A stretch of DNA of 64,000 nucleotides from Rebecca billardiae RCC1528 (Eukaryota > Protista > Haptophyta). The stretch covers positions 1,488,001-1,552,000 of the forward strand of contig OZ251233.1 of assembly GCA_965240325.2 (NCBI GenBank), written 5' to 3'. The position numbers and the translations under genes were made by a program. The notes below the pieces were generated by a model that was given only the letters and a program-made list of their open reading frames with translations, did not search any database and was not told the DNA's origin. This document shows, piece after piece, positions 955 to 31,098 of this stretch. Every line of letters starts with the position of its first letter. Positions within the stretch are counted from its first letter, which is position 1.

Positions 955-1815
955 TCAGGTCTGCAGCTGCGCATCGTCGTTCGCAGCCGCCCCGCGCGCG
1001 GCAGCACCGGCTGCCTCGCCGGCTGCTCCAGCCGCTGCATTTGGCGTCGCGGCTGGCTGTCCGGCGTCGCGGCTCGAGAAGGAGCCAATCGGCGGCAGCG
1101 GCGAGGTGGCGGAGGACGAGCGGCCGGTGGTGGGCAGGCTGGGCGGCGGGCCCGGCAGCGCGGACGCGGCCGGCAGTGGCGCCGCCGCGACGGGCTGCGG
1201 CAGCGCCGACGCCGTGCCCTCGCGCGCCACCGGCGGCAGCGCCGCCGGCGGCGCGCGTCGGATGGTCGGGTCGACGGGCGGCAGCGTGGCCGAGCCCCTT
1301 CGGGTGTCTGCGAGCGTGGGCGGCTGCCGCACCGACTCGACCGGCCCGGCCGAGGCCGGCGCGGCCCGGCTTGTGTCGGCGCGCGCGGGCGCGGGCGTCA
1401 CCGCCGCCGCGCCGGGCGGCGGCGGCGCCGGGCGCACGCGCTCGGCAGGCGGCGGCGGCGGCGGCTGCTGCTGGCCGGCGGGCGCGGACGGCGGGCCGTC
1501 CGCCGAATCGTCCCCGGGCGCGACCTGCGTGCGAGAGCTCCTCTTCGGCGAGCGGCTGAATCCCTGCCCAGCGGACGGCCCGGCAGAGCCGTCGCCCGTC
1601 GTCGCGGCGGCGCCGCCGACCCCGGCCTCGTCCTCGTCCGAGACGCGCACCTCTTCGACCACGCGCTTGCGCCGCCACCAGCCGAAGGCGCACAGGGCGG
1701 CGCAGCACAGCAGCGCCGCGATGGTCAGTCCGACGGACAGCCCGACTATGCTGCCCGTGTCCAGGGCCGGCTCGCTCGCCCTGGCGGCCGTCGCGCCGGA
1801 GGGAGCGCTTCCACT

Positions 1816-1848
<33 letters not shown>

Positions 1849-4800
1849 GCCGCCGGAGCTTGACGCGTCGCCGTCCTCGCCGCCGCCCTCGTCCGTGCCG
1901 GCTGTGTCCGCCACCTGCACGGCCGCAAGCGGGACGCCGACGGCGAGCGCGAGCGCGGAGAGCGGCGTGTTGCGCACGATGGCGGCGACGTCGATGTCGA
2001 GCGCGTGCGGCACGTACACCGCGACGATCAGCACCGTGCCGGCGGTGGGCAGCACCTTGAGAAAGCCCGGCTGCAGGCCGAGCAGCGCGCCGAGCCCGCT
2101 CACAAACTCGGCGCGGCTGGTGTCGTTGAGGCCCTGCTCCGTGTCGAGGGTGAAGATGAGAGTGGTCGTGAGCTCGCCGGGCGGCGAGGGCGGCGGCGCG
2201 AGCGGCGGCGTGGGCGAGGGCGGCGTGCTGGGCGGCGAGGGGCTCGGCGGCGGGCTCGGCGAGTGCGGCTCGCACGAGCTGTCGTCGAACGACGCCGTCG
2301 AGTCGAAGTTGGGCGCGACGGCGTCCGTGCACCCGCCAAACCGGCAGCCGCCCGAGTCGACCGTCGCTGCGGAGAGGAAGTTGGACGCGGCCGAGTCGGT
2401 GCAGCCGGTCACAGGGAAGACGCAGCTGCCGTCGTTCACGTCGGCGCTCGAGTCGTAGTTGCTCGCGTTCCGCAGCGTGCAGCCGCCGAGCACGCAGCTG
2501 CCGTCGTCGAGCGTGGCTGTGGCGGGAGGGAGGCACGCGCGCGCGGGCGAGGGGCGATGGGCGTCACGCACGGCGCGACGGGCGGGCGCGCGCGCGCGCG
2601 GTGCGCCGAAGGCGGCTGCGGTGCGCAGGGGCGCGCGCCGCACCTGCGGCGAGGTAGTTGATGGCGGCGCTGTCGGTGCAGCCGCGCACGTCGTACACGC
2701 ACGAGCCGTCGCTCGTCGTCCCTGCGTGCAGCCGTGTGCCACGCGGTGCGGGGCGCGTGCGCATGGCGCGGGCCGTGAGCGCGGCAGGGCGCGAGCGGCG
2801 GGCCTGCGGCTGGGCGGCGCGCGAGCGGCGGCGGCGGGGCGTGCGGCGCGGGGCGCGCACCGAGCGAGTCGAAGTTGATCGCGCTCGAGTCGACGCACGC
2901 CGCGCGCACGCAGCTGCCATCGTCGGCGTTCGCGGCGGCGGCGTAGTTGTCCGCGGCGCTGTCCGTGCAGCCGCGGACGCTGTACGAGCACGAGCCGTCG
3001 TTCGTCGTCGCGCTCGAGTCGAGGTTGTTGGCCGCCGGGTCGGTGCACCCGCCGTACGCGCACGGGCCGGCGACGGTGGCCTGCGGCACGAAGTCGAGCG
3101 CGAGCGAGTCGGTGCAGCCGGTGACAGGAAACTCGCACGAGCCGTCGTCGTCGGATGCGCCCGAGTCGTAGTTGAGCGCGCTCGGCACCGTGCAGCCCGA
3201 GCCCTGCAGCCGGCGGCCGCGGCGCGCGGCGCTCGCGTTCGCCGCCGTCGGGAAGGGGAGGCACTCGCCCGAGTCGACGGCCGCGGCCGGCAGGTAGTTG
3301 TACATGGTCGAGTCGGTGCAGCCCGCGAGCGCAAAGGCACACGCGCCCGCGCCGGGCTGCACAGTGGCGCTCGGGTCGAAGTTGGTCGCGGCCTCGAGCA
3401 GGCAGCCCGGGAAGGGCACGAAGCAGCTGCCGTCGTCCGCGCTGGCCTGCGGCACGTAGTTGAGCGCGCGCGAGTCGGTGCAGCCGCCGAACGTGTACGC
3501 GCACGCGCCCTGCGGCTGGCGCGTCGCGCTCGCGTTGAAGTTGGTCGCGGTCGGGTTCATGCAGCCCAGCACCTCCGCCACGCACGAGCCGTCGTCGGCC
3601 GTGGCGAACGACGCGAAGTTGAGCGCGGCCGGCGCGGTACAGCCGGGTACGGCGAACACGCACGCGCCCGCTGTCCCCGCGGAGGCCTGCACGGTCGCGG
3701 TCGGGTCGTAGTTGGTCGCGCCGGGCGCCATGCAGCCGAGCACAGCGATGAAGCAGCTGCCGTCGTCCCGCGTCGCCGCGGCCAGGTAGTTGACCGCCGC
3801 CGAGTCGGTGCAGCCCGGCGTCTCGTAGATGCACGCGGCCTTGGCGGTCGCCGCCGAGTTGTAGTTGAGGGCGGCTGGGTCGGTGCAGCCAAAGATGGGC
3901 GGCGGCGGCGCAGGCGGCGGCGCGGAGGGCGGCGGTGGCGAGGGCGAGTCCGGCGGCGGCGAGGGCGGTGGAGGCGAGGGAGGCGGCGGCGAGGGCGTGG
4001 GCGGCACGGGCGGTGAGCCAGGAGACATGGGCGGCAGCGGAGGCGGCGCCTGCGGGGGTGGCGGGGGCTCGCGCGGCGGTGTGGCCGGCGGCGTCGACGG
4101 TGGTGTCGACGGCGGCGCCGACGGCGGCGCCGACGGCGGCGCCGACGGCGGCGCCGACGGCGGCGCCGACGGCGGCGCCGACGGCGGCGCCGACGGCGGC
4201 GTCGATGGCGGCGTCGATGGCGGCATCGACGGCGGCATCGACGGCGGCGTCGACGGCGGCGCCGACGGCGGCGCCGACGGCGGCGCCGACGGCGGCGCCG
4301 ACGGCGGCGTCGATGGCGGTGCGAGCGGCTGCGGGCTCGGCGGCGGCGTGCTCGGCGGCGTTGATGGCGGCGAGAGCGGCGGCGGGCTCGGCGGCGGGCT
4401 CGGCGGCGGCGGGCTCGGAGGTGGCGGACTCGGAGGTGGCGAGCTAGGCGGTAGGCTCGGTGGCGGCGGTGGCGGCGGGGTCGGTGGTGGTGGCGGCGGG
4501 GTTGGTGGCGGTGGTGGCGGCGGGCTCGGTGGCGGCGGGCTCGGCGGCGGGCTGGGCGGCGGCGGCGGCGGTGGGCTGGGCGGCGGCAGGCTCGGCGGTG
4601 GGCTCGGCGGCGGCGGCGGCGGCGGCGACGGTGGTGGCGGGCTTGGCGGCGGGCTCGGCGGCGGCGGCGGCGGCGGGCTCGGCGGCGGTTGGCTCGGTGG
4701 CGGGCTCGGCGGCGGCGGCGGCGGCAGGCTTGGCGGTGGGCTCGGCGGCGGCGGCGGCGGTGCGCCCGGCGGCGAGCTCGGCGGTGGCGGCAGGCTCGGC

Positions 4801-7800
4801 GGCGGCGACGGCGGAGGGACCGGCGGCGGGCTTGGCGGCGGCGGCGGCGGCGGGCTCGGTGGTGGGCTCGGTGGTGGCGGGGGCGGCGGGTTCGGCGGCG
4901 GGCTCGGCGGCGGCGGTGGCGGTAGGCTCGGCGGCGGGCTCGGCGGCGGCGGCGGCGGTGGGCTTGGTGGCGGCGATGGTGGCGGCGGAGGCGGTGGGTT
5001 GGGTGGCGGGCTCGGCGGTGGCGACGGCGGTGGCGGCGGCGGCGGGCTCGGCGGCGGGCTCGGCGGTGGCGGCGGCGGCGGGCTCGGCGGCGGGCTCGGC
5101 GGCGGTGGCGGTGGCGGCTTCGGCGGCGGGCTCGGCGGCGGCGGGCTGGGGGGTGGGCTCGGCGGCGGCGAGGGCGGCGGGCTCGGCGGCGGCGAGGGCG
5201 GGTGTGGCGGAGGGAACGGGGCCGTGCGAGGCGGCGGCGGAAGGCTCGGCGGCGCCGACGGCGGCGGGCTTGGCGGCGGCGGCGGCGGCAGACTCGGCGG
5301 TGCGCTGGGCGGCGGGGTCGGCGGAGGCGGCGGCGGCGCCGACGGTGGCGGCGGCGGCTGGCTGGGCGGCGTGCTGGGCGGCGGCAAAGGCGGCGGAGGC
5401 GGCGGCGCACTCGGCGGCGCGCTTGGTGGCGGCGTCGGCGGCGGGCTCGGGTGAGGGCTGGGCGGCGGTGGCGGTGGCGGGCTTGGCGGCGGGCTTGGCG
5501 GCGGCGGTGGCGGCAGCGACGGCGGCGGGCTCGGCGGCGGCGGTGGAGGCAGGCTTGGCGGCGCGCTCGGCGGCGGCGGGCTCGGCGGCGGGCTTGGCGG
5601 TGCCGACGGCGGCGGGGACGGCGGCGGGCCCGGTGGCGGCGGCGGCGGTGGAGCTGGCGGCGGCGGCGGCGGCGACCTCGGCGGCGGGCTGGGCGGCGGG
5701 TTCGGCGGCGGCAGCGGCGGTGGGCTTGGCGGCGGGCTTGGCGGCGGGTTCGGCGGCGCGTCCGGCGGCGGGCTTGGCGGCGGGCTCGGCGGCGGTGCTG
5801 GCGGCGGCGGCGGGGGTGGGCGCGGTGGCGGGCTCGGCGGCGGGTTCGGCGGCAGTGCCGGCGGCGGGCTCGGCGGCGGGCTTGGCGGCGCCGCCGGCGG
5901 CGGCGACGGGGGTGGGCGCGGTGGCGGGCTTGGCGGTGGGGACGGCGGGGGCGCCGGCGGCGGGCTCGGCGGCGGGCTTGGCGGCGGCGCCGGCGGCGGC
6001 GACGGGGGTGGGCGTGGTGGCGGGCTTGGCGGTGGGGACGGCGGGGGCGCCGGCGGTGGGCTGGGCGGTGTGCTCGGCGGAGGGCTCGGCGGCGGCGCCG
6101 GCGGTGGGCTCGGCGGCGGGCTCGGCGGCGGGCTCGGCGGTGGCGGCGAGGGCGGTGGCGCCGGTGGTGGCGAGGGCGGCGGTGCGGGCGGCGGGCTCGG
6201 TGGCGGCGGCGAGGGCGGCGGCGCCGGCGGCGGGCTTGGCGGCGGGCTCGGCGGCGGGCTCGGCGGCGGGCTCGGCGGCGATGGCGGCGGCAGCGGCATT
6301 GTGCGCGGCGGCGGTGGCGGCGAGGGCGGCGGCGCCGGCGGCGGGCTGGGCGGGGGCGATGGCGGCGGCGAAGGCGGCGGCGGGCTCGGCGGCGGGCTCG
6401 GTGGCGGCGAGGGCGGTGGCGACGGCGGCGGTGGGCTCGGCGGCGGGCTCGGCGGCGGGCTCGGCGGCGGGCTCGGCGGTGGGCTCGGCGGCAGGCTCGG
6501 TGGCGGGCTCGGTGGAGGGCTCGGCGGCGGGCTCGGCGGCGGGCTTGGCGGTGGGCTCGGCGGCGACAATGGCGGTGGCGGCGGCGGGCTCGGCGGCGGC
6601 GACGGTGGCAGGGTGGGCGGCGGCGACGGCGGCGGGGATGGTGGCGGCGATGGCGGCGGCGCAGGCGGCGGGCGCGGCGGCGGCGACGGCGGCGGGCTCG
6701 GCGGCGGCAACGGCGGTGGCGGTGGCGGGTGTGGCGGCGGGCTCGGCGGCGGGCTCGGCGGCGGCGCAGGTGGCGGCGATGGCGGTGGCGATGGCGGCGG
6801 GCTCGGCGGTGGCGGGCTCGGCGGCGGGCTCGGCGGCGGGCTTGGCGGCGGGCTCGGCGGCGGCAATGGCGGCGGCGGCGGCGGGCGTGGCGGCGGGCTC
6901 GGCGGCGGGCTCGGCGGCGGGCTCGGTGGCGGGCTCGGCGGCGGGCTCGGCGGCGGGCTCGGCGGTGGCGCCGGCGGCGGCGAGGGTGGCGGCGAGGGCG
7001 GCGGGCTCGGCGGCGGCGGGCTCGGCGGCGGGCTCGGCGGCGGGCTCGGCGGCGGGCTCGGCGGCGGGCTCGGCGGCGGGCTCGGCGGCGGGCTCGGCGG
7101 CGGGCTCGGTGGCGGGCTCGGCGGCGGGCTCGGCGGCGGGCTCGGCGGCGGCGCGGGCGGCGGGCTCGGCGGCGGGCTCGGCGGCGGGCTCGGCGGCGGG
7201 CTCGGCGGCGGGCTGGGCGGCGGCGGGCTGGGCGGCGGGCTCGGCGGCGGGCTCGGCGGCGGGCTCGGTGGCGGGCTGGGCGGCGGGCTCGGCGGCGGCG
7301 ATGGTGGCGGGCTGGGCGGCGGGCTCGGTGGCGGGCTCGGCGGCGGGCTCGGCGGCGGCGGGCTCGGCGGTGGGCTCGGCGGCGGGCTCGGTGGCGGGCT
7401 GGGTGGTGGCGACGGCGGCGGGCTCGGCGGCGGCGGGCTGGGCGGCGGGCTGGGCGGCGGGCTGGGCGGCGGGCTCGGCGGCGGCGATGGGGGCGGCGAT
7501 GGCGGCGGGCTTGGCGGCGGGCTCGGCGGCGGGCTGGGTGGCGGGCTGGGCGGCGGGCTGGGTGGCGGGCTCGGCGGCGGGCTCGGCGGCGGGCTGGGCG
7601 GCGGGCTGGGTGGCGGCGGGCTGGGCGGCGGGGACGGCGGCGGGGACGGCGGCGGGCTGGGCGGCGGCGAAGGCGGCGGGCTCGGCGGCGGCGGGCTGGG
7701 CGGCGGGCTGGGCGGCGGGCTCGGCGGCGGGCTGGGCGGCGGGCTGGGCGGCGGCGAAGGCGGCGGGCTGGGCGGCGGGCTGGGCGGCGGGCTTGGCGGC

Positions 7801-10800
7801 GGCGGGCTGGGTGGCGGGCTCGGCGGCGGCGGGCTGGGCGGCGGGCTCGGCGGCGGCGCGGGCGGATACGGCGGCGGGCTCGGCGGCGGCGAGAAGTGGA
7901 TGCACGAGTACCCGTCGGGCTCGAGCTTGTACGTCTCCATGCACGAGCAGTAGTAGCTGCCGTTCGTGTTGGTGCAGTTGTGCTCACACAGGTCGATGCG
8001 CTCCGCGCACTCGTCGATGTCGTCGCACCGCCGGCCGTCCGCGTTCAGCCGGTAGCCGGCGAAGCACGCACACGCGCTCGCGCCGACCGTGTTCACGCAG
8101 ACGTGCTCGCAGTCGTTCGGGTCGACGTTGCCCTCGCCGCACTCGTTCACGTCGGAGCAGAACCAGCCCGGCCCCTCGTACCCCGGGTTGCACGTGCACG
8201 TGTACGAGCCCAGCGTGTTGTTGCAGCTCGCGAGCGGGTGGCAGTCGTCCAGCCCGCGCGCGCACTCGTCCACGTCGGTGCAGTTCCGCCCATCGCCCTC
8301 GAACCCGTCGATGCACGTGCAGCTGAAGCCGCCGTCGGTGTTGCGGCAGGTCGCCTGCGCGCCGCAGTCGTCGAGGCCGAGCGCGCACTCGTCGAAGTCG
8401 ACGCAGCGGTTGGTCGTCGCGTTGATCGCGCGGCCGGCGCCGCACACGCACGCGCCCTCGGCCGTGAGCTTGGGCGTGGGCTGCGCGCACGCCGTGCAGT
8501 TGGACGCGCTCGGCCCGTCGCACGCGGCGCAGCCCGCGTCGCACGCACGGCACTCGGAGCTCGGCGCGTGCACGAAGTGCCGCGTCGGGCACGCCGCGAC
8601 GCACGTGCCGTTGTGCAGCAGCGGGAAGAGCGGCGTGCACGAGAGGCACGCGCCGTCGCCCGGCCCGTCGCACGTGGCGCACGACGGGTCGCACGTGCGA
8701 CACACGGTCGCCAGCACCGTCTCGGTGACGGCGGCGCCCGACGGGTCGGTGCTGACGACCTCGGTGGTGGTCGACGCGCTGTACTGCCCGTCGGGGCACG
8801 CGGCGACGCACGCGCCGTCGAGCAGCACCGGCGTGCCGCCCGCCTGGTCGCACGCCGCGCAGTCGGTCGCGCCGCTGCCTGTGCAGCTTGCGCAGGTCGG
8901 CTCGCACGGCGCGCACGTGGCGTCCTCGCCGACAAACTGGCCGGGGTCGCACGCGGAGACGCACGCGCCGAAGGCGCGGCCGGCGGCGTCCGTGCCCGCC
9001 GGGCGCAGGTAGTAGTGCTCGAAGTCCGTCGGGTCGCACGTCGTGCAGTTCGACGCGCCCGCGGCGGCGCACGTGCCGCACGTGTCGGCGCACGCGCCGC
9101 AGCCGACGCCGTCCGGCAGAGGATACTCAGCAGACGAGCACGACGCCGGCACGCACAGCGCCGTGTTGTTGGCCGCGACCTCGTACCCGTCGACGCACGC
9201 GTCGCAGTGCGTGGCGTTCGCGCACGTGGCGCACCGCGCGATCGCGCCCGCGCACGGCGCGCACGCGCCGTCGCTCGCGTACGTGCCGCTCGGGCACGCC
9301 TCCTTGCAGCGGCCGGCGTGCAGCAGCAGCCCGCCATCACACGACAGGCACTGCGTGGACGCGGGCCCGGAGCAGCTCGCGCACTTGAAGTGGCACGCGC
9401 CGCACTCGACGCCGGACGTGCGGACGTACGTGCCCTCCGGGCACGCGCCGAGGCAGCTCGCGCCGAAGATGAACGGGAACGCGGACGACGTGTCGCACGA
9501 GAGGCATGCCGCCGCGCCGTTGCCCACGCACAGCGCGCACGTGCCGTCGCACGGCGCGCACTCGAGCGCGGACGAGCCCGGAACGACGTGGCTCGCGTTC
9601 GGCGCCGACTCGGCGGCGTACGCGCCGAGGGGCGTGCACGCGCCGACGCACGAGCCCGTGGGCGCGTGGTAGAACGGCGTGCCCGTCTGCGGGCACGAGT
9701 CGCACGCGCTGTCGTCCGAGCACGTGTAGCACGACGGGTCGCACGGGTCGCACGGCCCGCCGTCTGCGGGGCACGAGAAGTGCGGCTCGACCTGGTCGCA
9801 CAACGCCGAGCAGCCGTCGTCGCCGAGGACGTTGCCGTCGTCGCACACCTCGTCGCCCGCGACGAGGCCGTCGCCGCACTGCGTCGCGCACTCGTCCGGC
9901 CGGCGCAGCGAGCCGCCCGAGCAGTACCACCCCTCCTCCACCTCGCAGCTCGCCGAGCAGCCATCGCCGGAGAGCGTGTTGTTGTCGTCGCACGGCTCGG
10001 CCCCAATCACGCGCAGCCCGTCGCCGCACGTGGGCGTGCACGCGTCGAGGCCGCCGAGGTCGCCGATCTCCTGGTTCACCGCGGCGCACGTCCAGCCCTG
10101 CTCCACCTCGCAGTAGTAGTTGCACCCGTCGCCCGCGAGCGTGTTGTTGTCGTCGCACTGCTCGACCGAGGAGCGCTTGCCGTTGCCGCAGATGTGGACC
10201 ACTGGCACGACCGTCACGCTGGTGAACCCGCTCAGCTCGAGCGTCTGGTTGGTGGGCACGGGCTCGGTGGCGGTGTCCAGGTCGAAGGGCGACGCGCCGG
10301 GCACCAGCTCGCGCACCTCGACCTCGCACGCCCCCGCGTCGCCCGCCGTGAGGTTGGCGTACAGCGCGGGCTGGTCGCCGACGTGCGGCGGCTCGCCCGT
10401 CGTGTACAGCCGGACGAGCCAGCGCGCCTCGGCGGGCGTCGCGCTCAGGTGGTCGGTGGCGCTGGCGCGGAAGGCCTCCGCCTGGCCGATCGTGTCGAGG
10501 TTGAGGAGCGCCTCCGTCATCTCCGCCGCGCTCGTCCCCGCGCCCAGCCACACGTCCGCCACCTGCCCCCGGAAGCCGAGCGCGAACCGGCAGCCCGCGG
10601 CGTCGAGCGCCGCGCCGCCGCCGCCGCCGGGCGCTCGCAGCGTGACCAGTTGCTCCTCAAACACATAGGGCAGCCCGACGGACGCGTCGACGTAGGGCTG
10701 GTACGGCGCGAGCGAGGCGAGCGACGCGGTGCCGACGAGCGCGCCGAGCACCGGGTGCGCCGGCTGCACGACGATCGACACCGCCGCGTACGCCGAGACG

Positions 10801-15036: not shown

Positions 15037-18000
15037 ACCTTCTCGAACGTGACGAGCGTGTCGACGTGCACGCGCGCGCCGAGCTCCGAGTCCCAGATGG
15101 GCTCGTACGCGGGGCTCTCGAGCTGCGTGGCGGCGCGGACGACGACGGAGCGCGAGAGCAGACCCACCTCCACGCGCATGTCCACGAACTTGGGCGCGCG
15201 CGTCGCGTTGCCCGACGGGTCGTCCGCGCCGTCGTGCCACTCGACGGCCGACGGCCGCGCGTACGCGAGCGGCGCGCCGAGCGTGATCAGCGTGCGGCCC
15301 GGCCGGCGGTTGAGCGGCACCGTGTCGGCGGTGTCGGGCGTGCCCGCGCCGGGGAGCCCCGCGTCGGCGCGCACGCCCGCCCCGCCCGCCGCGAGCGCGT
15401 CGTACCCGTCCGTCCCGTTGATCGCGACGATCGTGTGCACCTCCGCCTCCCAGGGTTCGTACCCGGCGGGCGCGACGACGACCGACGCGCCGAGCGGCCA
15501 CTCGACGTAGCCGTCGAGCTCGAGGTAGGTGGCGCCCGCGTCGACGGAGGCGTTGAGCAGCGCCCACGTCGCGCCGGTGCGGTTGGACACGCCGTGCATC
15601 TCGACCACGCCGAACACCGCGAGCGTCTTCGGCCCGTAGTCCTTGAGCCCGAGCGGCAGCCCGCGCGTGTACCGATCCCCGTGCAGTACAATCTCGGCGC
15701 GCGCGCCGCCCGCCGCACCGTACGGCGCGTCGGGCGCGCCGATGATGAGCTCGGCGCCGCCGCGCACGACGATGTTGACGGCGTGGAGCTCGAGCGTGCC
15801 CGTCGTGTTCTCGTCGAACTGCAGCGCGCCGCGCACCGTGAGCACGTCGAGCACGGGCGGCTGCACGTCGAGCACCACGTGCAGATGCGAGGGGATCTCG
15901 GGAGAGTCCATGAAGCCGGGCGCCGTGCCGTTCCACGTGGTGTTCGTGTCGGACCAGTAGACGACGAGGCGGTTGTTGATGAGGAAGGAGGGCGCGGCGA
16001 AGGGGCAGCCCTCGGGCGGGCACGGCTTCGCCTCCACCAGCCCCTGCACCTCGATGCACGGGTCCCACCACTCGTGCCGGCACGGCGGAGGCCCCTTGAG
16101 CAGAGTCGTGAGCGTCATCGTCCGGTTGTCGAAGAACCAGTCGCCGAGCTCGGCGGGGAGGAGCGGGCGGACGGCGGCGTGCGCGGCGGCGGAGAGGTCG
16201 TGCGGCATGTACGCGGTGTACACGCGCAGCGCGCCCACCGTCGCGCCGAGCGCGTGCTCCGACACCGACGTCTCCCACGGCATCGGCGCGCCGAGCGTCG
16301 CCACGGTCGCGCCCGCGCCGAGCGGCAAGCCAACGGCCGCGCCCGAGACGGTGCTGAGCGGCACGCCGTCGACGAGCAGCGCCATCGCGCCGGCGGGCGC
16401 GGAGAGCGCGAGGCTGAGGTGGTGCCACCCCACCGTCAGCGCCTCGGCCAGCTTCACCGCGTGCCAGCTCGCCGGCGCGCACGTGCCGAACGAGCCGAAG
16501 CAGCCGGCCGCCTCGCATGGCCGAGTCGCGCGCACGCCGACGCACGGCGCGGCGGCGTCCGAGCCGTGCCCGACGAAGAGAAGCATGGCGGGCGCGGTGG
16601 GCGTGGACTCGTACCGGAGCCAGAGCTCGAAGGTGAGCTCGGTCGCGTCGCCGATCGTCGAGCCGTTCACCGGCAGCGCCGCGCCCACCGCCGCCGGCTC
16701 GAGCGCGACGCCGAAGCGCTTGCCCGCGGGCGCGCCGCCCGGCGCGTCGGCCGCGCCGAGCGAGAGAGCGCGCGGCGCGCCCGCGCCCGCGCTCGCGTCG
16801 AGCGCGTCGAGCGCGGCGTCGGGCGCGTCGACGACGCCGTGCAGGCCGAGCGCGGCGTCGGCGCCCTCGCGCACCACGCGCGCCGCCGCGCCGCGCCGCA
16901 GCGCCACGCGCGCGCGCGCGCCGCCGAGCGCGGGCCCGCGGTCGGAGCCGCCGTCCGGCTCGTCAAACCAAAAGTCGTGCGCGAGCGAGCCAAGCAGATT
17001 CGCGCCGTGCACGGAGGCGTTGACGAAGTCGGTGAGGCGCGCGGCGCGCATCGCGCCGAGCACGTCCGCGGCGGGCGGGTCGTCCGCCGGCACGGGCGGC
17101 CGCCCGCCCGCGAACGGCGCCGTCTTCAGCCCCGCCCCCGCGAAGCTCGTGGCGATGTAGTCGGGCTCGTCGCGGTAGCGCGTGCGCACGACGAGCGCGT
17201 CGCCCGCGCGCAGGTCGCCCACGCCCGCGGTGTACTGGCGCACGTCGACGTAGTCGGACTCGAGCAGGTCCCAGTGGAGCTCGTGGACCACGCCCGTGCG
17301 GATCGGCGCCTCGTACCCGCGCCCCAGCGTGCGCCGCTTCAGCTGGTAGTCCGCGCGCAGCGTGGGCAGGTTGGCGTACTCGACCGGACCGACGCACGCG
17401 TCCGCGCGCACGCGGCACGACGTCCAGGGGTCGGAGCCGTCGGACCAGACGAGGCGGCCGCCGGGCTGGAGGACGGCCTCGCGCGGCAGCACGTCGCCGT
17501 TCGACTGCACGAACTCGACCGACAGCCGCTCCACCGCGTCCGCGCCGATCGGCTGCCACTGCCCGCGCGCGCGCGCCCACAGGTCTGTGCGGCCGTATAC
17601 GACCGCGCTGAAGTTGGCGCCCGGCCCGTTGGTGACGGTGACGAGGTAGTCGACGCCGTCGGGGCGCCACTTGTCGGCGAGGAAGTCGGCGTCGTCCTCG
17701 CGGACGAAGCGGCCGCCCGGCGCGTGCGTCAGCTTGAGGTGCACGTTCGCCAGCCCCGTCACCGGCTCCATGTTGTTCAGCGCGAACCGGCGGAAGCCCA
17801 TGCGTGGGCACACGTACCCCGCGCGCCCGTCCGCCCAGAAGCGGGCGTCCGAGGGCGAGTAGCAGCCAGGGTAGCCGCCGGCGTCGAGGAGGGCGTGTGC
17901 GGGGAGGAGCGAGCCGGGCACGCCGGTGCCCACGAGGCTCCCGTCCACGTCGACGAGCACGCCCTCGTGCTTGTGCATCCAGAACACGCGGTACGGCGCG

Positions 18001-24000: not shown

Positions 24001-27000
24001 CGCGGCGGCGGGCTGGGCGGCGGGCTGGGCGGCGGCGGCGTGCTCGGCGGCGGGCGCGGCGGTGGGGACGGTGGCGGCATCGGCGGCAGTGCCGGCGGCG
24101 GGCTCGGCGGCGGGCTGGGCGGCGGGCTCGGCGGCGGCGGCGGCGGCAAGCTCGGCGGCGGGCTCGGCGGTGGCAGCGGTGGCGGCGGCGTGGGCGGCGG
24201 CGCCGGTGGTGGCGAGGGCGGCGGCGAGGGCGGCGGGCTCGGTGGTGGCGGCGCTGGCGGCGGCGGCGCCGGCGGCGGGCTCGGCGGCGGGCTGGGCGGC
24301 GGGCTGGGCGGCGAGGGCGGCGGCAGCGGCTCCGTGCGCGGCGGTGGCGGCGGCACGGGCGGCGGCGCCGGCGGAGGGCTCGGCGGCGGCGACGGCGGTG
24401 GCGGGCTCGGCGGCGGGCTCGGCGGCGGGCTGGGCGGCGGCGGCGGCGGCGCGCTCGGCGGCGGGGTCGGCGGCGGCAGCGGCGGCGGCGGCGAGGGCGG
24501 CGACGCCGGTGGTGGCGAGGGCGGCGGCGAGGGCGGCGGGCTCGGCGGCGGCGGCGAGGGCGGCGGCGCGGGCGGCGGGCTCGGCGGCGGCGGGCTGGGC
24601 GGCGGCGAGGGCGGCGGCGCCGGCGGCGGGCTGGGCGGCGGGCTGGGCGGCGGGCTCGGCGGCGAGGGCGGCGGCAGCGGCTCCGTGCGCGGCGGCGGCG
24701 GCGGCGAGGGCGGCGGCGCCGGCGGCGGGCTCGGCGGCGGCGATGTCGGCGGCGGTGGCGGCGGCGGGCTCGGCGGCGGGCTCGGCGGCGGGCTCGGCGG
24801 CGGGCTGGGCGGCGGCGGCGGCGGCAGGCTTGGCGGTGGGCTCGGCGGCGGCAGCGGCGGCGCGCCTGGCGGCGGGCTCGGCGGCGGCAGCGGCGGCGCG
24901 CTCGGCGGCGGGTTGGGCGGCGGGTTGGGCGGCGGGCTCGGCGGCGGGCGCGGCGGCGGCGCGCTCGGCGGCGGGCTCGGCGGCGGGCTCGGCGGCGGGC
25001 TCGGCGGCGGCGGGCTCGGCGGTGGGCTTGGCGGCGGGCTCGGCGGCGGGGTTGGCGGCGGCGGCGGGCTTGGCGGCGGGCTCGGCGGCGGCGCGGGCGG
25101 CGGGCTCGGCGGCGGGCTCGGCGGCGGGCTCGGCGGCGGCGGGCTCGGCGGCGGGCTCGGCGGCGGCGGGCTGGGCGGCGGGCTCGGCGGTGGGCTCGGC
25201 GGCGGGCTCGGCGGCGGCGGGCTCGGCGGCGGGCTCGGCGGCGGGCTCGGCGGCGGGCTCGGCGGCGGCGGGCTCGGCGGCGGGCTCGGCGGCGGCGGCG
25301 GCGGGCTCGGCGGCGGCGGCGAGGCGAAGAGCACTCGCAGTGCTCCCTCATACGGCGGCAGCACGCACACGATGGACGAGGGCGACGACGAGAGCACGGG
25401 CGCGCACGGCCGGCCGTCGACGGTGGGCGGCGCGCCCTCCGCCCAGACCAGGGCGGCGCCGAGCCCGCGCCCGCGCAGCGTGAGCGCGCCGCCGCCGCGC
25501 AGCGAGCTCGCCGCAGGCTCGATCGCCTCAATCGCCGGCACCGCGGCGAAGGTGGGCTCGTCGCGACCGCCCGGCACGCGCGACGGCGGCAGTGCGTACC
25601 CGCCGCCAAAGCCCGCGCGCGGCGCGAGCCAGAAGCGCACGCGCGCGGGCGCGCCGAGCGGCACGCCTGCCGCCAGCGGGTCCGCGGCGGTCGCGCACGT
25701 GCCGGACTCGCCGTCCGGGGCGAGCGAGAGCAGCGCGCACGGCGCGTCGCCGACTTGGACGCGCGCGGCGGACGTGTCGTTGCCCAGCCCGCGCCCGCGC
25801 AGCGTGAGCACCGAGCCCGGCGGCGCGGTCGGCGGGCTCACCGACGCGAGGATTGGCGTGCCGACGTACGTGAAGACCACGCCGGCCGCCGGCGCGCCGA
25901 GCCCCGCGTCCGCGAGCCCGACCGTGACGTTCTGCGCGTGCGCGTCCGCCGCCGGGTCGTAGCCCGCTCGCTCGGGCGCGGCCGGGTCGAGGCGCAGCGG
26001 CGCGGTCGAGCCGCCGGTCTCGCACTCGAGCGACCAGCCGTCGGCGTGGCGCACGGCGCACGGCATGCCGCCAATCATCACGACCGTCGCGCCCGCCGCG
26101 CCCGCCGGCGCGCTGCTCGCGTTGTACAGGTGCTCGCCGGTCAGCCGAACGAGCGTGCCGCCACCCGCCGCGCCGCTGTCGGGCGACACCGACGCGACGC
26201 TCGGGAGCTGCTGCGTGGCGTTGGGCGCGGGCGCGGCCTCGGGGTCGGCCGCCGCCGCGCCGCCAAGGCGCAGCTTGTCGCCGGCCCCGACGAGCGCGAG
26301 CTCGGGCGTCGCGAGCGCGCGCGCGTGCACACCGCCCGAGGCGTCGAGGAACTCGACGAGCGCGCGCGCGCGCGCGCCGGGCGCGCTCGGCGTCGGCGCC
26401 ATCGCGCCCAGCGTGCAGCTCAGCGCGCCGAGGGACGCGGCGTCGGTGTCGCAGGGCGCGGAGGCGAGCACGGCGCGCGTGCACGCGCCCGAGCCGCCGT
26501 CCTCGTCGTCGCACGGCACGGCCGCCGCCTCGGCGCCCGCCGAGCCCTCCGCGCCGTCGAGCAGCACCAGGCTCACGCGCACGCGAGCGCTGTCATCCGC
26601 AAACGGTCCACCGCCGAGCGTGAGCCGCGCGCCGCCGAACACTGAGGCTTCGGGCGCGGCGAGGCCGTCCGCGCCGACGCCGACGGTGGCGTTGACGCTA
26701 TACCGCACCAGGTGCGAGCCGAGCGCGTTGCCCAGCGGCTGCACGCGCAGGCGCACGCGCGCCAAGCCGCCGCCGTGCGGAGGCGCGGCGCACGCGAGCG
26801 CGCCCGCCGCGCGCGACGCGCCCGCGGCGGGCGGCGCGCACGCCGCGCCGTCGACCGTCCCCTCGGCAGGCTGGCGCGTGTCGCCGAGCGCGAGCGGCGC
26901 GGCGAGCACGAGGAGGTCGCCCGCGCGCACGACCGGCGTGGCCGACGCGTTCGCCGCCGCCGCCGCCGCCTCGAGCTCCGCAGCGCTCAGGCCGTCGGCG

Positions 27001-30000
27001 CCCACCGCGGCGGCGCCGACCGCGCCGACCGCGCGCAGCGGCGCCACACCGTCCGCGCCGCCGGCGAGCGCGTGCGCGCACGCGCCCACGCCGGAGACGG
27101 CCGCCTCGCCGACATACTCGGGCGCGACGGAGTAGACAGAGGCGCCGCCGCGCTCGCCGCCGCACACCTGCGCCTCGTTCCCGCCGCACAGCGCGGCGCA
27201 CGTCGCGCCGTCGTCGTCGGCGGGGTTTCCGAACGGCGTCTTCTCGGTGCGCGAGCGGTAGGCCGGGTTGGCACACGCGCACAGCTTGTTGTTGCGCGTC
27301 GACTGCAGCGCGAACAGGGATGCACCCGCGCCGACGCAGAGCGCGTTGCACTCCTCGAGCGTCCACGGGTGCCCGCCGGACACCCCGCCCACGTACTCAC
27401 GGAACACCGCCACGTACCGCCGCGTCTTGGGCGGGAAGCCGCGAAGCACAGAGTCCTGCTCGGCGACGATTAAATCGCCGGTCTCGAAGCAGCCGGCGTA
27501 ATGTGGCCGCCACGCGGCAAAGGAGCCCCCGCAGCCCGCGGCCGCGCGGCCGCGCACGCGCACGCTGAGCTGCGGGCCCGGCGCGGGCATCACCACGTGC
27601 GCGTCGTCCAGCGGGAAGAGCCGCACGCCGCCGCTCGCCAGCACGGACACGGCCGCGGTCGGCTCGACCGCCGCCGCCGCGACCGAGCCCGGCGGCGGCG
27701 GCGTCAGGTGCGCGTACTCTGTGACGACGGCGGCGCGCGACGCGAGCGCGGGCGGCGTCGCGATCGCGCTCGCGTTCGCTGTGCCGTTGGTGCTCGCGTT
27801 CGCACCACCGCCCACCATCGGCGGCCCGTCGAGCCCGCCCTCGATCGCGGGCACGTACGCCCGCAGCCCGCTGGCGTTGGTGAGCACCAGCGCGCCGCCG
27901 TCGCCCGTGTCCAGACCGACGAGCTCCGCTTGGTAAGTGATGCCGCCGCTGGGTGTGCCGAGCCGGACGAGGTGCGGCGGCGTGCTGCCGACGGGCTGGA
28001 ACGCGCCGAACGCGGCGCGCGCGGGCTCGTCGCCCTCCTCGCCCAGCGCCCACGCCACGCGCGCCGCCTCGCCGCGCGACACCGCCGCCGAGTCGGCGGG
28101 CGCCCGCTCGAGAGACAGCTCGACCGCGCCGCGCGCGCACGTCTGCGCGCGCGCAATCGTCGCGAGCGCAATGTCCTGCTGCGAGCCGGCGCGGACGAGG
28201 CGGAGCGGCGGGAGCGGGCGGGCGTGCGAGCACTCGGGCTCGTGCAGCCGGAGCGCGAACGTCGTCTCCGCCACGCTGCTCTCGAGCGCCACCGCCTCGA
28301 CCTCCGTCACCGCCGGCCAGCCGGGGCCGGGGCCGTTGCCATCCGCGTCGGCCGCGTAGGGAAGGGCGCCGCCCTCGCGCGCGTCCGCGTCGGCGAGCTC
28401 GCGCGCGACGGTGGAGCGGCGCACGTGGAGCGGCGCGGTGGAGATCGCGAGGTCGTCGATCCACACCGCCCCGCGCATCGAGTCTTGCTCGCCGTACCGG
28501 TCGTGCATGTGCCGGTCGCTCGGCGCATCCAGGTAGACTGCGCAAAGGCACAAGCGCGCGCGCGCGCACGCGAGCGCGCGCCGGCCGCGAGGCGCGCGAG
28601 TGAGCGCGCGCAGGCGCGGAGGGGCGGGCGGAGGTGCGCGGGCGCGAGGCGGCGCGGCGCGGCGCGAAGGCGCGATCGGGCGCGCGCGCACATCCGAGCA
28701 CTTGGTGGTTGTTCGGCCCGTACGCCGCGTCCATCTGCGCGTCGAGGTCGATGCACTTGTGGTGCCAAGCACCGTCGTCTTGGACGGGCGCAAAGCTGGC
28801 CGCGCGCCGGTGCACGTTGGCGCCGCTCGAGTCGTCGTTGAGCTGGACGGAGGCCCAGTGCCAGCCGATCGAGCTGGCGGTGGAGGTGAAGATGAGCACG
28901 TTGCCCACCGCGCCCGGCTCCAGCCGATACGCCAGGCATAAGTACGGGTACTCGCTCGTACTAAACCCCTGCGTCGTCTGCGCGCCCTCGAGGCCCGACG
29001 GGTTCCACCAGCGGAAGTTCCGGCCGTACGAGCCGGCGACGACGCCCGCGCCGGCGGTGGACCAGGCGGGGGCGCCGCGCAGCGCGTACCGCCCGCAGAA
29101 CGCCTCGCGCGCGTCCGACACCGCCGGGTCGTTGTCGAACGTGCGCGCCCAGTCATCGGGGCCGCCCGGCCCCCCTTCGAACGTGTCCGCCTCCCACAGG
29201 CCGAGGCGCGCGTTGGGTGGGTAGGCCTTCCACTCGTTGGGCCGGCGCGGGTTGGGCGGCGGCAGCGGGCCGACGGCGTCGAGGGACGGACCGATCGGCA
29301 CCTCGAGCTGCGCGCCGGACTGCACGTCCACCAGCGTCGCCGACCACTCGCAGACCGGCTCGAAGAGCGAGCGCGCCGCGTCGGCGAGCTCGTGCGGACG
29401 AGCGTCTTTCGGCAGCGGCGCCGTTGTGCGGTTGAGCAGCGCGAGCGCGAGGCCGGAGGCGTTGGCGAGCGTGAGCGTCTGCACGTGCTCGTGCGCGAGC
29501 GCCGTGCCGAACGCGCCGACCAGCTCGTCGCCGCCCGCCGCGTCGAACCCGCCGGCCGCGCCCGCGCGCGCCAGCGCCAGCTGCACTCGGTGCGCGACGA
29601 CTGCGTCTCCGAGCCGGCGCACGCTCGCGCCGCCCGCCGGCACCTCGTGCAGCTGCAGGCCGAGGCGGGCGTAGTCCCAGCCGGTGGTGTCGGCGAACCA
29701 GAGGTCGAGCAGCACCCGCTCGCCCGCCGCGAGCCCGAGCCGCTCCTGCGCGCACGCCAGCCCCGCGTCCCAGCTCATCGACCCTGTCTGTGTCGTGCAC
29801 ACGGGCTCGTCGCCGCCCGCGACCGGCCCGGCGCCCGGCTCACCAAATGGGCGGGCGGGCGTGCCGACGAAGAGGACGGCGCGCTCGCTGGCGTGCATGT
29901 GGAGGGAGTAGTTGCCCGCGCGCGGCGCCTCGAACCAGCCCACCATCCGGCCGACGTAGTAGTCCTTGAAGTCGCTCCCCACCTTGGGCGGCCACGAGAA

Positions 30001-31098
30001 GGCACCCAGTGAGAGCACGGCGTCCGCGGCCGCGGCGCCGTCGTGCGCCGCCGAGTGCGCGCCGGCCACGTTCGCCGCGCGGCGGGTCTCCGCGAGCGCG
30101 GTGAGCGTGGCGAGCGAGTGCGACGGCTGCCCGTCGTACCGCTCAAAGCGCACGCCGCGCGCGCCGAGGTGCTGCCACCCGCCCGAGTACGGCGCCGGCT
30201 CGGGGTCGGCGGGCGCGTCGCCGACGACGCACTCGAACGAGCCAGCGGCCGGCCGGCCGGTGACGGCGCACGGGAGGTCGCCGACGCGCACGTCGAGGCC
30301 CGCCGCGTCGCCCGGCGGGAACCCCTCGCCGTGCACCGTCAGCGTCGCGCCGCCCTCCACGCTCGACAGCGCGGGCGTCACCGCCGACACGTGCGCGCGC
30401 ACGTCGAGCGCGTGGCCGCGCACCGGTAGCGCGCCAAACAGGTCGGGCGTGCGCGCGGCGGGGTGGAGCACGGCGTCGCCGTCGGCGCCGGCGGTGGAGA
30501 CGTTGTGCGGGCCGCCGACGAGCGGGCCGCTCGCGACGCACGTCGGCCCGTTCAGCGGGCCGAGCAGGTTGCCGTCTTCGTCGTACCGGCGGCACACGCG
30601 CCGGTCCGGCAAGTGCGCGCCGCCGACCGAGCCGCCGCGCCCGTCGTCGACGAGCGCCCACGCGTCGCCGGTGGAGCGCCGGCCGTTGAAGTGGACGAGC
30701 TCGCCCGCGCGCACGCTCGGCGAGCGGACGGCCGTCACGTTCGGCGTGACCGCCGCCTGGTACGTGTACGTGCACGCGCTCGACGTGTCGCGGCACGTCG
30801 CGGGCACGCCGTCGACGAGCACGGTCACGCCGACGTCGACGTCGTTGCCGGCGGCGAGCGGGTCGGGCAGCGGCGGCGTGGTGCAGACGAGCTGCGTCGT
30901 CGTCGACGAGAAGGTCTCGAGCGGGCATGGCGTCGGCCCGATGAACACGCTCGCGGGCGAGTACAGCGAGCCAAAGTTGGCGCCGCGGATGGTGAGCGAC
31001 TGCCCGCCCGCGCGCGAGCCGCGCGTGGCCGAGAGGTCGGTGATGACGGCGCCGGTCGCGCCGCCCACGAGCGCGCACAGCAAAAGCGCGCCGCGCAT
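955..31098 (-). CDS. Giant fibrocystin-L/PKHD1L1-like type-I membrane protein, 9,907 aa; exons 31098-28692, 28537-2861, 2721-2644, 2516-955
   Basis: Signal peptide MRGALLLCALVGGATG. Three GT-AG introns (28538-28691, 2722-2860, 2517-2643) join four ORFs in frame: 29,724 nt = 9,908 codons, with sensible junctions VLG-F-YLD, DSL-G-TTSDGSC and YLAA-A-TLDDGSC. Many IPT/TIG repeats; PA14-like region. G8 (WSRPTTWGGLAPPVEGDSVQIP) followed by beta-helix motifs (KYPVHFHMIG, GHTYFIEDAIETKN). A second G8 and the fibrocystin-L-type motifs DDCVSMDCDG, ESMDGDTETRSL and GGQDHGWCFGYTCLKRLSTF. TM IVGLSVGLTIAALLCCAALCAFGWW followed by RRKR at 1675-1749. Confidence 0.9.
2270..3893 (-). repeat. 17 tandem ~26-aa GCTDxxAxN(Y/F)xxxAxxDDGSC repeats (within giant CDS)
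   Basis: Counted in the spliced translation; each has two Cys and conserved N and DDGS residues. Confidence 0.9.
3897..7893 (-). repeat. Extensin/HRGP-like (SPPP)n stalk 2, ~1,330 aa (within giant CDS)
   Basis: GGCGGCGGGCTC-type 12/15-nt repeats on + encode SPPP/SPPPP, grading into PPSA/PPST near 4080-4380. Confidence 0.95.
7900..12680 (-). other. Cys-rich region of giant CDS: EGF, two furin-like (FU) repeat runs, 3 Myxococcus-type CGxG-x-E-x-CDDxN repeats, ~5 Ca-binding EGF domains
   Basis: CHxSCxxC..CxxC..CPxGxY repeats at ~11260-12580 and ~8460-9750. CGNGKRSSVEQCDDNNTLAGDGC-type repeats at ~9770-10192. CxDxDEC...CxNTxGSYxCxC at ~7900-8405. Confidence 0.88.
23885..25323 (-). repeat. Extensin/HRGP-like (SPPP)n stalk 1, ~480 aa, inserted in the IPT array of the giant CDS
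   Basis: Translation is almost pure S/A-PPP repeats. Confidence 0.95.

What the first reader, a model, noticed from the sequence alone, without database searches (positions are those of the whole stretch)
955..31098. A ~1-MDa single-pass fibrocystin-L-like giant carried on extensin-like polyproline stalks
Seen: four ORFs splice cleanly into one 9,907-aa protein with a 25.7-kb exon, signal peptide, TM and a ~240-aa cytosolic tail. Established: IPT/PA14/G8/beta-helix is the PKHD1/PKHD1L1 architecture (about 4,000 aa in animals, on cilia/stereocilia), and SPPP repeats are hydroxyproline-glycosylated PPII rods in algal agglutinins and mastigoneme proteins. Inference: the ~1,330-aa and ~480-aa stalks at ~0.3 nm/residue would hold the fibrocystin head roughly 0.4-0.55 um off the membrane. 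That makes it a candidate molecular component of flagellar hairs, scales or haptonema, or a tethered glycan-capture filament.
Basis: partly seen in the sequence, partly recalled or inferred. Interest (0 to 1): 0.88.

Follow-up and report, generated by a model that had tools for sequence, protein, structure and literature searches.

The report
Giant fibrocystin-L protein on proline stalks
A very GC-rich alga, probably a haptophyte, carries a real four-exon gene for a 9,907-residue membrane protein: a relative of the animal cilia and stereocilia protein fibrocystin-L, with two long Ser-Pro-Pro-Pro spacers that no other retrieved relative has; its location, sugar coat and function are still only inferred.

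Summary
On the minus strand, four exons (31098-28692, 28537-2861, 2721-2644, 2516-955) join through three phase-1 GT-AG introns into a 9,907-aa, 991-kDa protein. It has a signal peptide, one strong transmembrane helix and a 239-aa tail.

Homology supports the splicing:
- Sixteen relatives align without a break across junction 1.
- Junctions 2 and 3 rebuild two canonical 20-residue two-cysteine modules.

No RNA run was listed, so there is no transcript evidence.

The core belongs to the fibrocystin-L family (E 1e-236, 35-39% identity). The N-terminus and both G8/beta-helix units lie in the same order as in fibrocystin-L, and a profile search supports the PA14 domain. Fibrocystin-L is already reported in haptophytes.

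What looks new is the size, a C-terminal cysteine-rich/stalk/module/anchor cassette, and two SPPP tracts of 491 and 1,333 aa. None of 69 retrieved relatives or 26 metagenome loci has such a tract.

The 0.4-0.55 um stand-off is a contour length and therefore an upper bound. Hydroxyproline glycosylation, a flagellar location and glycan capture are untested. Two polybasic linkers suggest the protein may be cleaved or shed.

Verdict: a new variant of a known kind, of moderate interest.

The parts
31048..31098 (-). Start codon and predicted signal peptide (aa 1-17)
   Evidence: First ATG after an in-frame stop; hydrophobic N-terminus, KD 1.87
30760..31047 (-). First IPT/TIG domain (aa 18-113); a second lies near aa 236-300
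   Evidence: Pfam TIG E 2.4e-22, two stretches
29653..29964 (-). PA14-like domain (about aa 379-482)
   Evidence: Pfam gives only GLEYA at E 0.1. Profile A1, built with relatives, hits the PA14 structure 6qdi at 5.8e-10 and Flo5 at 7.6e-7
28428..29199 (-). Pfam-less beta-jelly-roll (CBM-like) domain, aa 634-838, split by intron 1
   Evidence: 16 homologues align across the junction. The AF2 model of homologue P0077 (pLDDT 89) is nearest CBM22/CBM16
28538..28691 (-). Intron 1 (154 nt, phase 1, GTGCGC...GCGCAG)
27156..27368 (-). WSC-like domain (aa 1192-1262), below the Pfam cut-off
   Evidence: Pfam WSC E 2.4e-5, 24.9 bits against a cut-off of 27.8
23847..25319 (-). Stalk 1: 491-aa SPPP tract (aa 1875-2365), ending in ERRRRLL
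   Evidence: 72% Pro, 70 SPPP units, 12-nt period, longest exact repeat 74 nt
20229..20471 (-). SUEL/rhamnose-binding lectin-like domain (aa 3491-3571), below the Pfam cut-off
   Evidence: Pfam SUEL_Lectin E 6.6e-6, 26.9 bits against a cut-off of 31.4
19332..19685 (-). G8 domain 1 (aa 3753-3870)
   Evidence: Pfam G8 E 6.3e-33
18474..19040 (-). CEMIP-type parallel beta-helix 1 (aa 3968-4156)
   Evidence: Pfam CEMIP_beta-hel E 1.1e-50; aligns to fibrocystin-L residues 2069-2835
15555..15938 (-). G8 domain 2 (aa 5002-5129), followed by beta-helix 2 to about aa 6090
   Evidence: Pfam G8 E 2e-19; giant 5084-6075 aligns to fibrocystin-L 3108-3958
7887..12674 (-). Cysteine-rich region (aa 6090-7685): EGF, furin-like/VSP-like repeats, DUF4215 and four Ca-binding EGF domains
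   Evidence: Pfam EGF_CA 1.7e-20, cEGF, DUF4215, EGF_Teneurin; high Cys density
3897..7895 (-). Stalk 2: 1,333-aa SPPP tract (aa 7683-9015)
   Evidence: 73% Pro, 190 SPPP units. Ser is coded by both the AGC and TCG families and Pro by all four codons. Longest exact repeat 87 nt
2263..3887 (-). Array of 17 two-cysteine modules CTDxxAxNYxxxATxDDGSC (aa 9020-9469), spanning introns 2 and 3; an RRGRRLQ linker sits at aa 9242
   Evidence: no Pfam family
2722..2860 (-). Intron 2 (139 nt, phase 1)
2517..2643 (-). Intron 3 (127 nt, phase 1)
1903..2178 (-). Juxtamembrane domain of about 90 aa (aa 9501-9592), possibly SEA-like, followed by an acidic Gly/Asp linker
   Evidence: The sequence pattern is read by eye as beta-alpha-beta-beta-alpha-beta. 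There is only a weak Atlas lead to mucin-16 SEA (0.81) and no Pfam hit
1675..1746 (-). Transmembrane helix (aa 9645-9668)
   Evidence: Strongest hydrophobic window, KD 2.44, followed by RRKR
955..1674 (-). Cytosolic tail (239 aa, Pro/Ala/Ser-rich, with PPPPPP and PPPP runs) and the TGA stop at 955-957

Best explanation
This is one real gene for a type I membrane glycoprotein of the fibrocystin-L (PKHD1L1) family, enlarged about 2.3-fold by insertions and a C-terminal fusion. From the N-terminus it runs: signal peptide, IPT-IPT-PA14, a CBM-like jelly-roll, WSC-like and further IPT domains, then stalk 1 (491 aa of SPPP). After that come IPT and lectin-like modules, the two conserved G8/beta-helix units, and about 1,600 aa of EGF/furin-like cysteine repeats. 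Stalk 2 (1,333 aa of SPPP) follows, then 17 small disulfide modules, a juxtamembrane domain, one TM helix and a 239-aa proline-rich cytosolic tail. Shown: the gene structure, the topology signals, family membership of the core, and protein-level constraint on the stalks. Inferred: the SPPP tracts adopt extended polyproline-II conformation, probably hydroxylated and O-glycosylated as in green-algal HRGPs. They would act as spacers that present the sugar-binding-type head well outside the cell or flagellar coat. The contour length is about 410 nm for stalk 2, and stalk 1 adds about 150 nm for the N-terminal module. On this reading the protein is a long surface fibril for adhesion, coat formation or sensing, coupled to the cytoplasm through its tail.
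For: Gene model and coding signal. Junction 1 is validated by 16 colinear homologues; junctions 2 and 3 restore canonical modules. Family: the core hits fibrocystin-L at E 5e-236 to 1e-199, against 1e-71 or weaker for fibrocystin. G8 unit 1 aligns to unit 1 and unit 2 to unit 2. The N-terminus is colinear with proteins of about 4,000 aa from residue 20 or so, and PA14 is supported by profile. Pfam finds TIG, G8 and CEMIP_beta-hel. Stalks: Ser is coded by two unrelated codon families and Pro by four codons, and the frame is kept across both tracts. Topology: a single strong TM plus a signal peptide. Precedent: PPII at about 3.1 A per residue, and an MST3 PPII filament of about 800 nm tethered in the ciliary membrane (PMC11015965). 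FPC-L is a stereocilia-coat protein (PMC13424714). Earlier scan notes report HPAT and P4H genes in this genome (not checked here).
Against: No transcript or peptide evidence was obtainable. No close orthologue was found, so conservation of the stalks cannot be shown. Hydroxyproline glycosylation is established for Viridiplantae, and I found no paper on it for haptophytes. An isolated polyproline chain is semi-flexible (my own knowledge), so the real height may be well below the contour length. The polybasic linkers ERRRR|LL after stalk 1 and RRGRR|LQ inside the module array could mean the mature protein is cut into pieces. WSC, SUEL and LamG calls fall below Pfam thresholds. The localisation is unknown.
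Confidence: 0.55

Rival explanations
1. A processed and shed matrix or coat glycoprotein. The precursor is made as modelled but is cut by a kexin/furin-type convertase at the polybasic linkers (after aa 2361 and/or aa 9246). The fibrocystin-like ectodomain is then released, or held only non-covalently, and ends up in scales, mucilage or the pericellular matrix rather than as a tethered filament.
For: ERRRRLL lies directly after stalk 1 and RRGRRLQ in a break in the module array, both in linker context. R.[KR]R occurs 3 times against 0.9 expected. Fibrocystin and fibrocystin-L carry an Rx[KR]R site, undergo convertase and ADAM cleavage, and are shed (PMC13566292). A scan note describes RRxL linkers in a paralogue (unchecked).
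Against: The motif counts are small (RR.?L 7 against 2.9 expected). No protease or cleavage data exist. The long conserved-frame tail and TM argue that a membrane-bound form matters.
Confidence: 0.2
2. An over-fused gene model. The locus gives two or more mRNAs, or the SPPP tracts (or parts of them) are removed as introns, so no 9,907-aa chain exists.
For: In 86% GC repeat DNA all frames stay open (ORFs 3557-7987 and 4444-7944 on the same strand), so an open frame through the stalks is weak evidence on its own. No RNA data were available. The public protein collection held no matching product of 1,350-15,000 aa.
Against: The flanking domains are in the same frame across both tracts. Ser uses the AGC and TCG families and Pro uses four codons, as expected for selection on the peptide. 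The three verified introns are only 127-154 nt. Each part lacks what it would need to stand alone: only exon 1 has a signal peptide and only exon 4 a TM.
Confidence: 0.12
3. The stalk lengths are assembly artefacts. The gene is real, but the 12-nt tandem arrays are expanded or collapsed, so the 491- and 1,333-aa figures and the 1-MDa mass are unreliable.
For: The arrays are 1.4 kb and 3.8 kb of a 12-nt period at 74% match. The sequencing technology behind this window is unknown to me.
Against: The repeats are degenerate; the longest exact repeat is 87 nt. The frame is preserved on both sides. If this is the published Diacronema lutheri assembly, it was built from PacBio reads with N50 23 kb (PMC8379373), but the identity is not verified.
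Confidence: 0.1

Closest known systems
Fibrocystin-L (PKHD1L1), animals and several protist lineages
   Same: Signal peptide, an N-terminal IPT-IPT-PA14 start, further IPT domains, two G8 plus parallel beta-helix units in the same order, and a single C-terminal TM. Identity is 35-39% over the core and these are the best named hits. The family is already reported in Haptophyta (Pei & Grishin 2017, as cited in PMC13566292).
   Different: 9,907 aa against about 4,200. It has two SPPP tracts (0 of 69 relatives have one) and about 3,500 extra residues between the second beta-helix unit and the TM. The tail is 239 aa against 9 aa in human FPC-L (PMC13424714). At least 7 IPT domains were detected, against 12 in P0074.
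Unnamed environmental fibrocystin-L-like proteins P0074 (3,968 aa) and P0069 (6,319 aa)
   Same: P0074 shares the N-terminal IPT-IPT-PA14-jelly-roll order, both G8 units, a TM and a 209-aa tail. P0069 is the only other giant found and also carries the jelly-roll domain.
   Different: Neither has a Pro-rich tract, the EGF/furin block or the two-Cys module array. Identity is only 30-40%.
Chlamydomonas mastigoneme proteins MST3/MST1 and sexual agglutinins (green-algal HRGPs)
   Same: Long Ser/Pro-rich tracts that form glycosylated PPII shafts hundreds of nm long, tethered in the flagellar membrane and carrying globular or lectin-like domains (PMC11015965; PMC2113723).
   Different: MST3 is anchored by a PKD2-like multi-pass domain and is wrapped by MST1; here there is a single TM helix. 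The globular domains share no homology. The lineage differs (haptophyte), and Hyp-glycosylation is unproven there.
CEMIP / TMEM2 (CEMIP2)
   Same: A G8 plus CEMIP-type beta-helix unit (Pfam CEMIP_beta-hel E 1e-50).
   Different: They have one G8 unit, are about 1,400 aa, and have no IPT array. The hits to fibrocystin-L are far stronger.
Plant extensins
   Same: Ser-Pro3-4 repeats as the dominant motif (260 SPPP units in total).
   Different: No Tyr cross-linking motifs (one Tyr in 1,824 stalk residues and no YxY or VYK). It is membrane-anchored and chimeric, and it is not a plant protein.

Membership tests
Fibrocystin-L (PKHD1L1) family | Two G8 domains, each followed by a parallel beta-helix, in conserved order | tested here: met
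   Pfam G8 twice and CEMIP_beta-hel. Unit 1 aligns with FPC-L 2069-2835 at 422 bits and unit 2 with 3108-3958 at 303 bits; the cross-matches are weaker.
Fibrocystin-L (PKHD1L1) family | Array of IPT/TIG domains starting right after the signal peptide | tested here: met
   At least 7 TIG stretches. The N-terminus is colinear with relatives of about 4,000 aa from residue 20 or so.
Fibrocystin-L (PKHD1L1) family | PA14 domain in the N-terminal region | tested here: met
   Below Pfam threshold alone (GLEYA E 0.1). Profile A1, built with relatives, hits PA14 structures (6qdi 5.8e-10, Flo5 7.6e-7). The aligned position matches PA14 in the relatives.
Fibrocystin-L (PKHD1L1) family | Closer to fibrocystin-L than to fibrocystin or CEMIP | tested here: met
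   FPC-L hits score 680-805 bits and fibrocystin hits 260 bits or fewer.
Fibrocystin-L (PKHD1L1) family | Type I topology: signal peptide plus a single C-terminal TM | tested here: met
   Hydropathy scan only; no dedicated predictor was available.
Fibrocystin-L (PKHD1L1) family | Divergent SEA domain after the second beta-helix unit, before the TM | tested here: inconclusive
   A ferredoxin-like half-motif lies at aa 6035-6090 (TRADD-like_N E 8.6e-4, below the cut-off). The juxtamembrane domain at aa 9501-9592 has only a weak Atlas lead to SEA.
Fibrocystin-L (PKHD1L1) family | Very short cytosolic tail (9 aa in human FPC-L) | tested here: not met
   The tail is 239 aa. However, protist relatives have tails of 43-321 aa, so this feature defines the animal protein rather than the family.
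Hydroxyproline-rich glycoproteins (extensin-type) | Repeated Ser-Pro3-5 motifs | tested here: met
   70 and 190 SPPP units in the two stalks.
Hydroxyproline-rich glycoproteins (extensin-type) | Prolyl 4-hydroxylation, Hyp-O-arabinosylation and Ser-O-galactosylation | not testable with these tools
   This needs glycoproteomics. Scan notes report HPAT and P4H genes elsewhere in the genome, which I did not check.
Hydroxyproline-rich glycoproteins (extensin-type) | Tyr cross-linking motifs (YxY, VYK) of classical extensins | tested here: not met
   No YxY or VYK, and one Tyr across both stalks.
Mastigoneme axis protein (MST3 type) | PKD2-like multi-pass channel domain as the membrane anchor | tested here: not met
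   There is a single hydrophobic helix only and no PKD-channel Pfam hit in exon 4.

The most novel reading that the evidence does not exclude
A haptophyte builds a surface or flagellar hair as a single polypeptide. A fibrocystin-L head rich in sugar-binding-type modules sits at the tip of a glycosylated polyproline-II shaft about half a micron long, which is rooted by one TM helix and a proline-rich tail. That would extend plant/green-alga-type HRGP shafts to a distant lineage. It would also suggest that forming or sensing through a ciliary or cell-surface coat is the ancestral job of the fibrocystin-L family.
Probability: 0.25. Interest if true: 0.75.

Novelty: new variant of a known kind. 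Interest (0 to 1): 0.55.

Why it matters
Fibrocystin and fibrocystin-L are disease proteins (ARPKD and hearing loss) whose ectodomain function is still unclear. A protist member mounted on long spacers and decorated with lectin-type modules points to a coat-forming or ligand-reaching role, and it gives a tractable unicellular system for testing that idea. It would also be evidence that extensin-like SPPP shafts serve as molecular spacers outside the green lineage. Finally, it shows how a protein of about 1 MDa can be built from a known scaffold by inserting repeats and fusing on an anchor cassette.

Tried and rejected
- **RNA evidence.** The look-up of sequencing runs listed no RNA run, so read laying could not be used.
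- **Close orthologues or public gene models.** I searched the core against proteins of 1,350-4,290 aa and of 4,700-15,000 aa, exon 4, and exon 1 against 1.84 billion representatives. One metagenome scan gave 26 loci. Nothing exceeded about 42% identity, so the stalks cannot be shown to be conserved.
- **Fold of the two-Cys module array.** The single-sequence AF2 model failed (pLDDT 36.5). Pfam found nothing even at E 10.
- **Juxtamembrane domain.** It shows no significant similarity to the matching part of the proteins that share the module-TM cassette, so that resemblance is architectural only.
- **Hidden non-coding inserts in exon 2.** Rejected: GC3 stays at or above 0.82 everywhere outside stalk 2 and the last 50 residues.
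- **Classical cross-linking extensin.** Rejected: there are no Tyr motifs.
- **MST3-type anchor.** Rejected: there is a single TM.
- **Literature.** Searches for haptophyte HRGPs and for pavlovophyte flagellar hairs returned nothing usable. Pei & Grishin 2017 is not held and is cited second-hand.
- **P0074 contig look-up.** It found no record.

Full report
**Observation**

The minus strand of 955-31098 holds an 8,906-codon ORF (2436-29156) flanked by overlapping ORFs 27397-31098 and 955-3834. Reading the translations shows that the first 208 or so and the last 140 or so codons of the big ORF are out-of-frame, Arg-rich sequence. Real domain sequence continues in the neighbouring ORFs.

Three short introns join the pieces exactly. 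All have the donor G|GTGCG and the acceptor CAG|, and all are phase 1. The exons are 28692-31098, 2861-28537, 2644-2721 and 955-2516, and the introns are 154, 139 and 127 nt at 85-86% GC.

The CDS is 29,724 nt and encodes 9,907 aa of 990.8 kDa. Exon 2 is 25,677 nt.

**Is it coding, and is it one gene?**

- GC3 is 0.86-0.98 in every segment, cytosolic tail included, against GC2 of 0.45-0.65 outside the repeats.
- A 50-codon sliding window never drops below 0.82 outside stalk 2 and the last 50 residues, so nothing suggests hidden non-coding inserts.
- Junction 1 cuts a domain of about 200 aa (aa 634-838). Sixteen homologues from a search of 1.84 billion representatives align colinearly and without a gap across residue 803. 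For example, WHHKCIDLDAQMDAAYGPNNHQVLG|FYLDAP...GAVWIDDLAIS aligns with WHHKCIDLDAQLDASLGAKNHEIQAIIM...GAFHIDDFRVS.
- Junctions 2 and 3 fall inside two members of an array of 17 two-cysteine modules. After splicing, both have the modal 20-residue Cys-Cys spacing and the consensus CTDxxAxNYxxxATxDDGSC.
- Only exon 1 carries a signal-peptide-like start, and only exon 4 carries a strong hydrophobic helix (aa 9645-9668, followed by RRKR). That gives a type I topology with a 239-aa tail.

No RNA run was listed for the locus. The splicing therefore rests on homology and repeat continuity, not on transcripts.

**The stalks**

Stalk 1 covers aa 1875-2365 (491 aa, 72% Pro, 70 SPPP units). Stalk 2 covers aa 7683-9015 (1,333 aa, 73% Pro, 190 SPPP units).

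At the DNA level they are 12-nt tandem arrays at 74% match, but they are degenerate. The longest exact repeat is 87 nt.

An open frame alone means little here, because other frames of this 86% GC repeat are also open. Three points argue for translation:
- The flanking domains are in frame across both tracts.
- Ser is coded by two unrelated codon families (AGC/AGT 169 and TCN 75 in stalk 2).
- Pro is coded by all four codons.

The exact lengths remain unverified.

**What it is**

Pfam gives the following:

| Domain | Result |
|---|---|
| IPT/TIG | at least 7 stretches |
| G8 | two copies (6e-33, 2e-19) |
| CEMIP-type beta-helix | 1e-50 |
| EGF_CA / cEGF | four copies |
| DUF4215, EGF/furin-like repeats | present |
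| WSC, SUEL-lectin, LamG | below the curated cut-off |

The 2,451-aa core hits fibrocystin-L from fishes, amphibians, mammals, a crinoid, a tunicate, the green alga Cymbomonas and unnamed marine eukaryotes. E-values run down to 5e-236 at 35-39% identity. Fibrocystin itself scores far lower.

Unit 1 (giant 3644-4396) aligns to fibrocystin-L 2069-2835, and unit 2 (giant 5084-6075) aligns to 3108-3958. Cross-matches are weaker, so both ancestral units are kept in order. The N-terminus is colinear from residue 20 or so with relatives of about 4,000 aa.

The PA14 call is weak on its own. A profile built with those relatives hits the solved PA14 domains 6qdi (5.8e-10) and Flo5 (7.6e-7).

The domain split by intron 1 has no Pfam family. 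A confident AF2 model of a homologue (pLDDT 89) is a beta-jelly-roll nearest CBM22/CBM16, with TM-scores of 0.4-0.57.

The protein is therefore a fibrocystin-L family member. [quoted passage not shown]

**What is unusual**

1. **Size.** Only one other relative above 4,700 aa was found: P0069, 6,319 aa, 30% identity.
2. **SPPP tracts.** None of the 69 retrieved family members, and none of the 26 metagenome loci with up to 10 kb of flank, has a tract of 50% Pro or more.
3. **Extra C-terminal sequence.** About 3,500 residues lie between the second beta-helix unit and the membrane: a cysteine-rich EGF/furin block, stalk 2, the 17-module array, a short SPPP linker, a domain of about 90 aa and an acidic linker.

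Nine of the 15 proteins found with exon 4 have the same modules followed by a TM helix within about 60-250 residues. P0221 adds a Pro linker and an intervening domain. This looks like a reusable anchor cassette, although the juxtamembrane domains themselves are not detectably similar.

The nearest solved example of the module is a single copy in MPEG1/perforin-2 (6u2j residues 333-353, E 0.028; tentative). An Atlas feature search points to uncharacterised, mostly haptophyte clusters.

**Mechanism**

Established knowledge:
- PPII helices extend about 3.1 A per residue.
- In Chlamydomonas, the hydroxylated and glycosylated PPII region of MST3 spans about 800 nm and is tethered in the ciliary membrane (PMC11015965).
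- Fibrocystin-L is a stereocilia-coat protein (PMC13424714).

Inference: stalk 2 gives a contour length of about 413 nm between the membrane-proximal modules and the EGF/G8 head. Stalk 1 adds about 152 nm between the head and the N-terminal IPT/PA14/CBM-like/WSC module.

These are upper bounds. From my own knowledge, bare polyproline is semi-flexible, so the real height depends on glycosylation and crowding.

I found no paper on Hyp-glycoproteins in haptophytes. Earlier scan notes report HPAT and P4H genes and other giant SPPP proteins in this genome, but I did not check them.

The most likely role is a long surface or flagellar fibril for adhesion, coat building or sensing. The Pro-rich tail (PPPPPP and seven PxxP) is a possible cytoplasmic docking site. 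None of the localisation claims (hairs, scales, haptonema) could be tested.

**Rivals**

- **Cleavage or shedding.** Two polybasic linkers, ERRRRLL directly after stalk 1 and RRGRRLQ in a gap of the module array, fit convertase sites. Fibrocystins are known to be cleaved and shed, so the mature product may be fragments or a shed matrix protein.
- **Over-fused model or repeat-length artefact.** Neither can be excluded without long cDNA and long genomic reads.

**Organism**

The window is 59-87% GC. An earlier scan note calls the genome a pavlovophyte haptophyte. This fits the 73.25% GC of the PacBio assembly of Diacronema lutheri (PMC8379373), but I did not verify the identity.

**Verdict**

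This is a new variant of a known family, not a new kind of system. Interest is moderate, and it would be higher if the tethered-filament reading is shown experimentally.

Noticed in passing
window 28428-29199 (aa 634-838 of the protein): A domain of about 200 aa with no Pfam family (conserved W-H-x-K-C-I-x-L-D-x-Q-L-D and W-I-D-D-F motifs). It recurs in many marine eukaryotic surface proteins, sometimes three times per protein and often beside TSP3, PKD or LamG domains. The AF2 model of a homologue is a CBM22/CBM16-like jelly-roll.
   Followed up: partly
window 2263-3887: Seventeen tandem two-cysteine modules CTDxxAxNYxxxATxDDGSC with no Pfam family. The same modules precede a TM helix in 9 of 15 unrelated environmental proteins. 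One copy resembles MPEG1/perforin-2 residues 333-353 (6u2j, E 0.028).
   Followed up: partly
window 23850-23880 and 3180-3215 (aa 2355-2365 and 9240-9250): Polybasic linkers ERRRRLL and RRGRRLQ, which are possible proprotein-convertase cleavage sites. A scan note reports similar RRxL linkers in a paralogous fibrocystin-like gene of the same genome.
   Followed up: partly
window 28538-28691, 2722-2860, 2517-2643: All three introns are phase 1, 127-154 nt and 85-86% GC, and they share the donor GTGCG(C/G)(C/G)C. This may be a useful splice signature for this genome.
   Followed up: no
window 695-734: A (CT)20 microsatellite about 220 nt downstream of the stop codon, in a region where GC falls to about 65%. 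It probably lies in the 3' UTR or the intergenic region.
   Followed up: no
window 48321-51677 (+): A single ORF encoding a kinesin motor (Pfam E 1.7e-50) with a C-terminal SH3 domain, which is an uncommon combination.
   Followed up: no
window 32788-35493 (+) and 40390-42585 (-): The neighbouring ORFs are an RCC1-like repeat protein and a protein with RTX calcium-binding nonapeptide repeats; the latter is already noted by the scan. No glycosyltransferase lies next to the giant gene.
   Followed up: no
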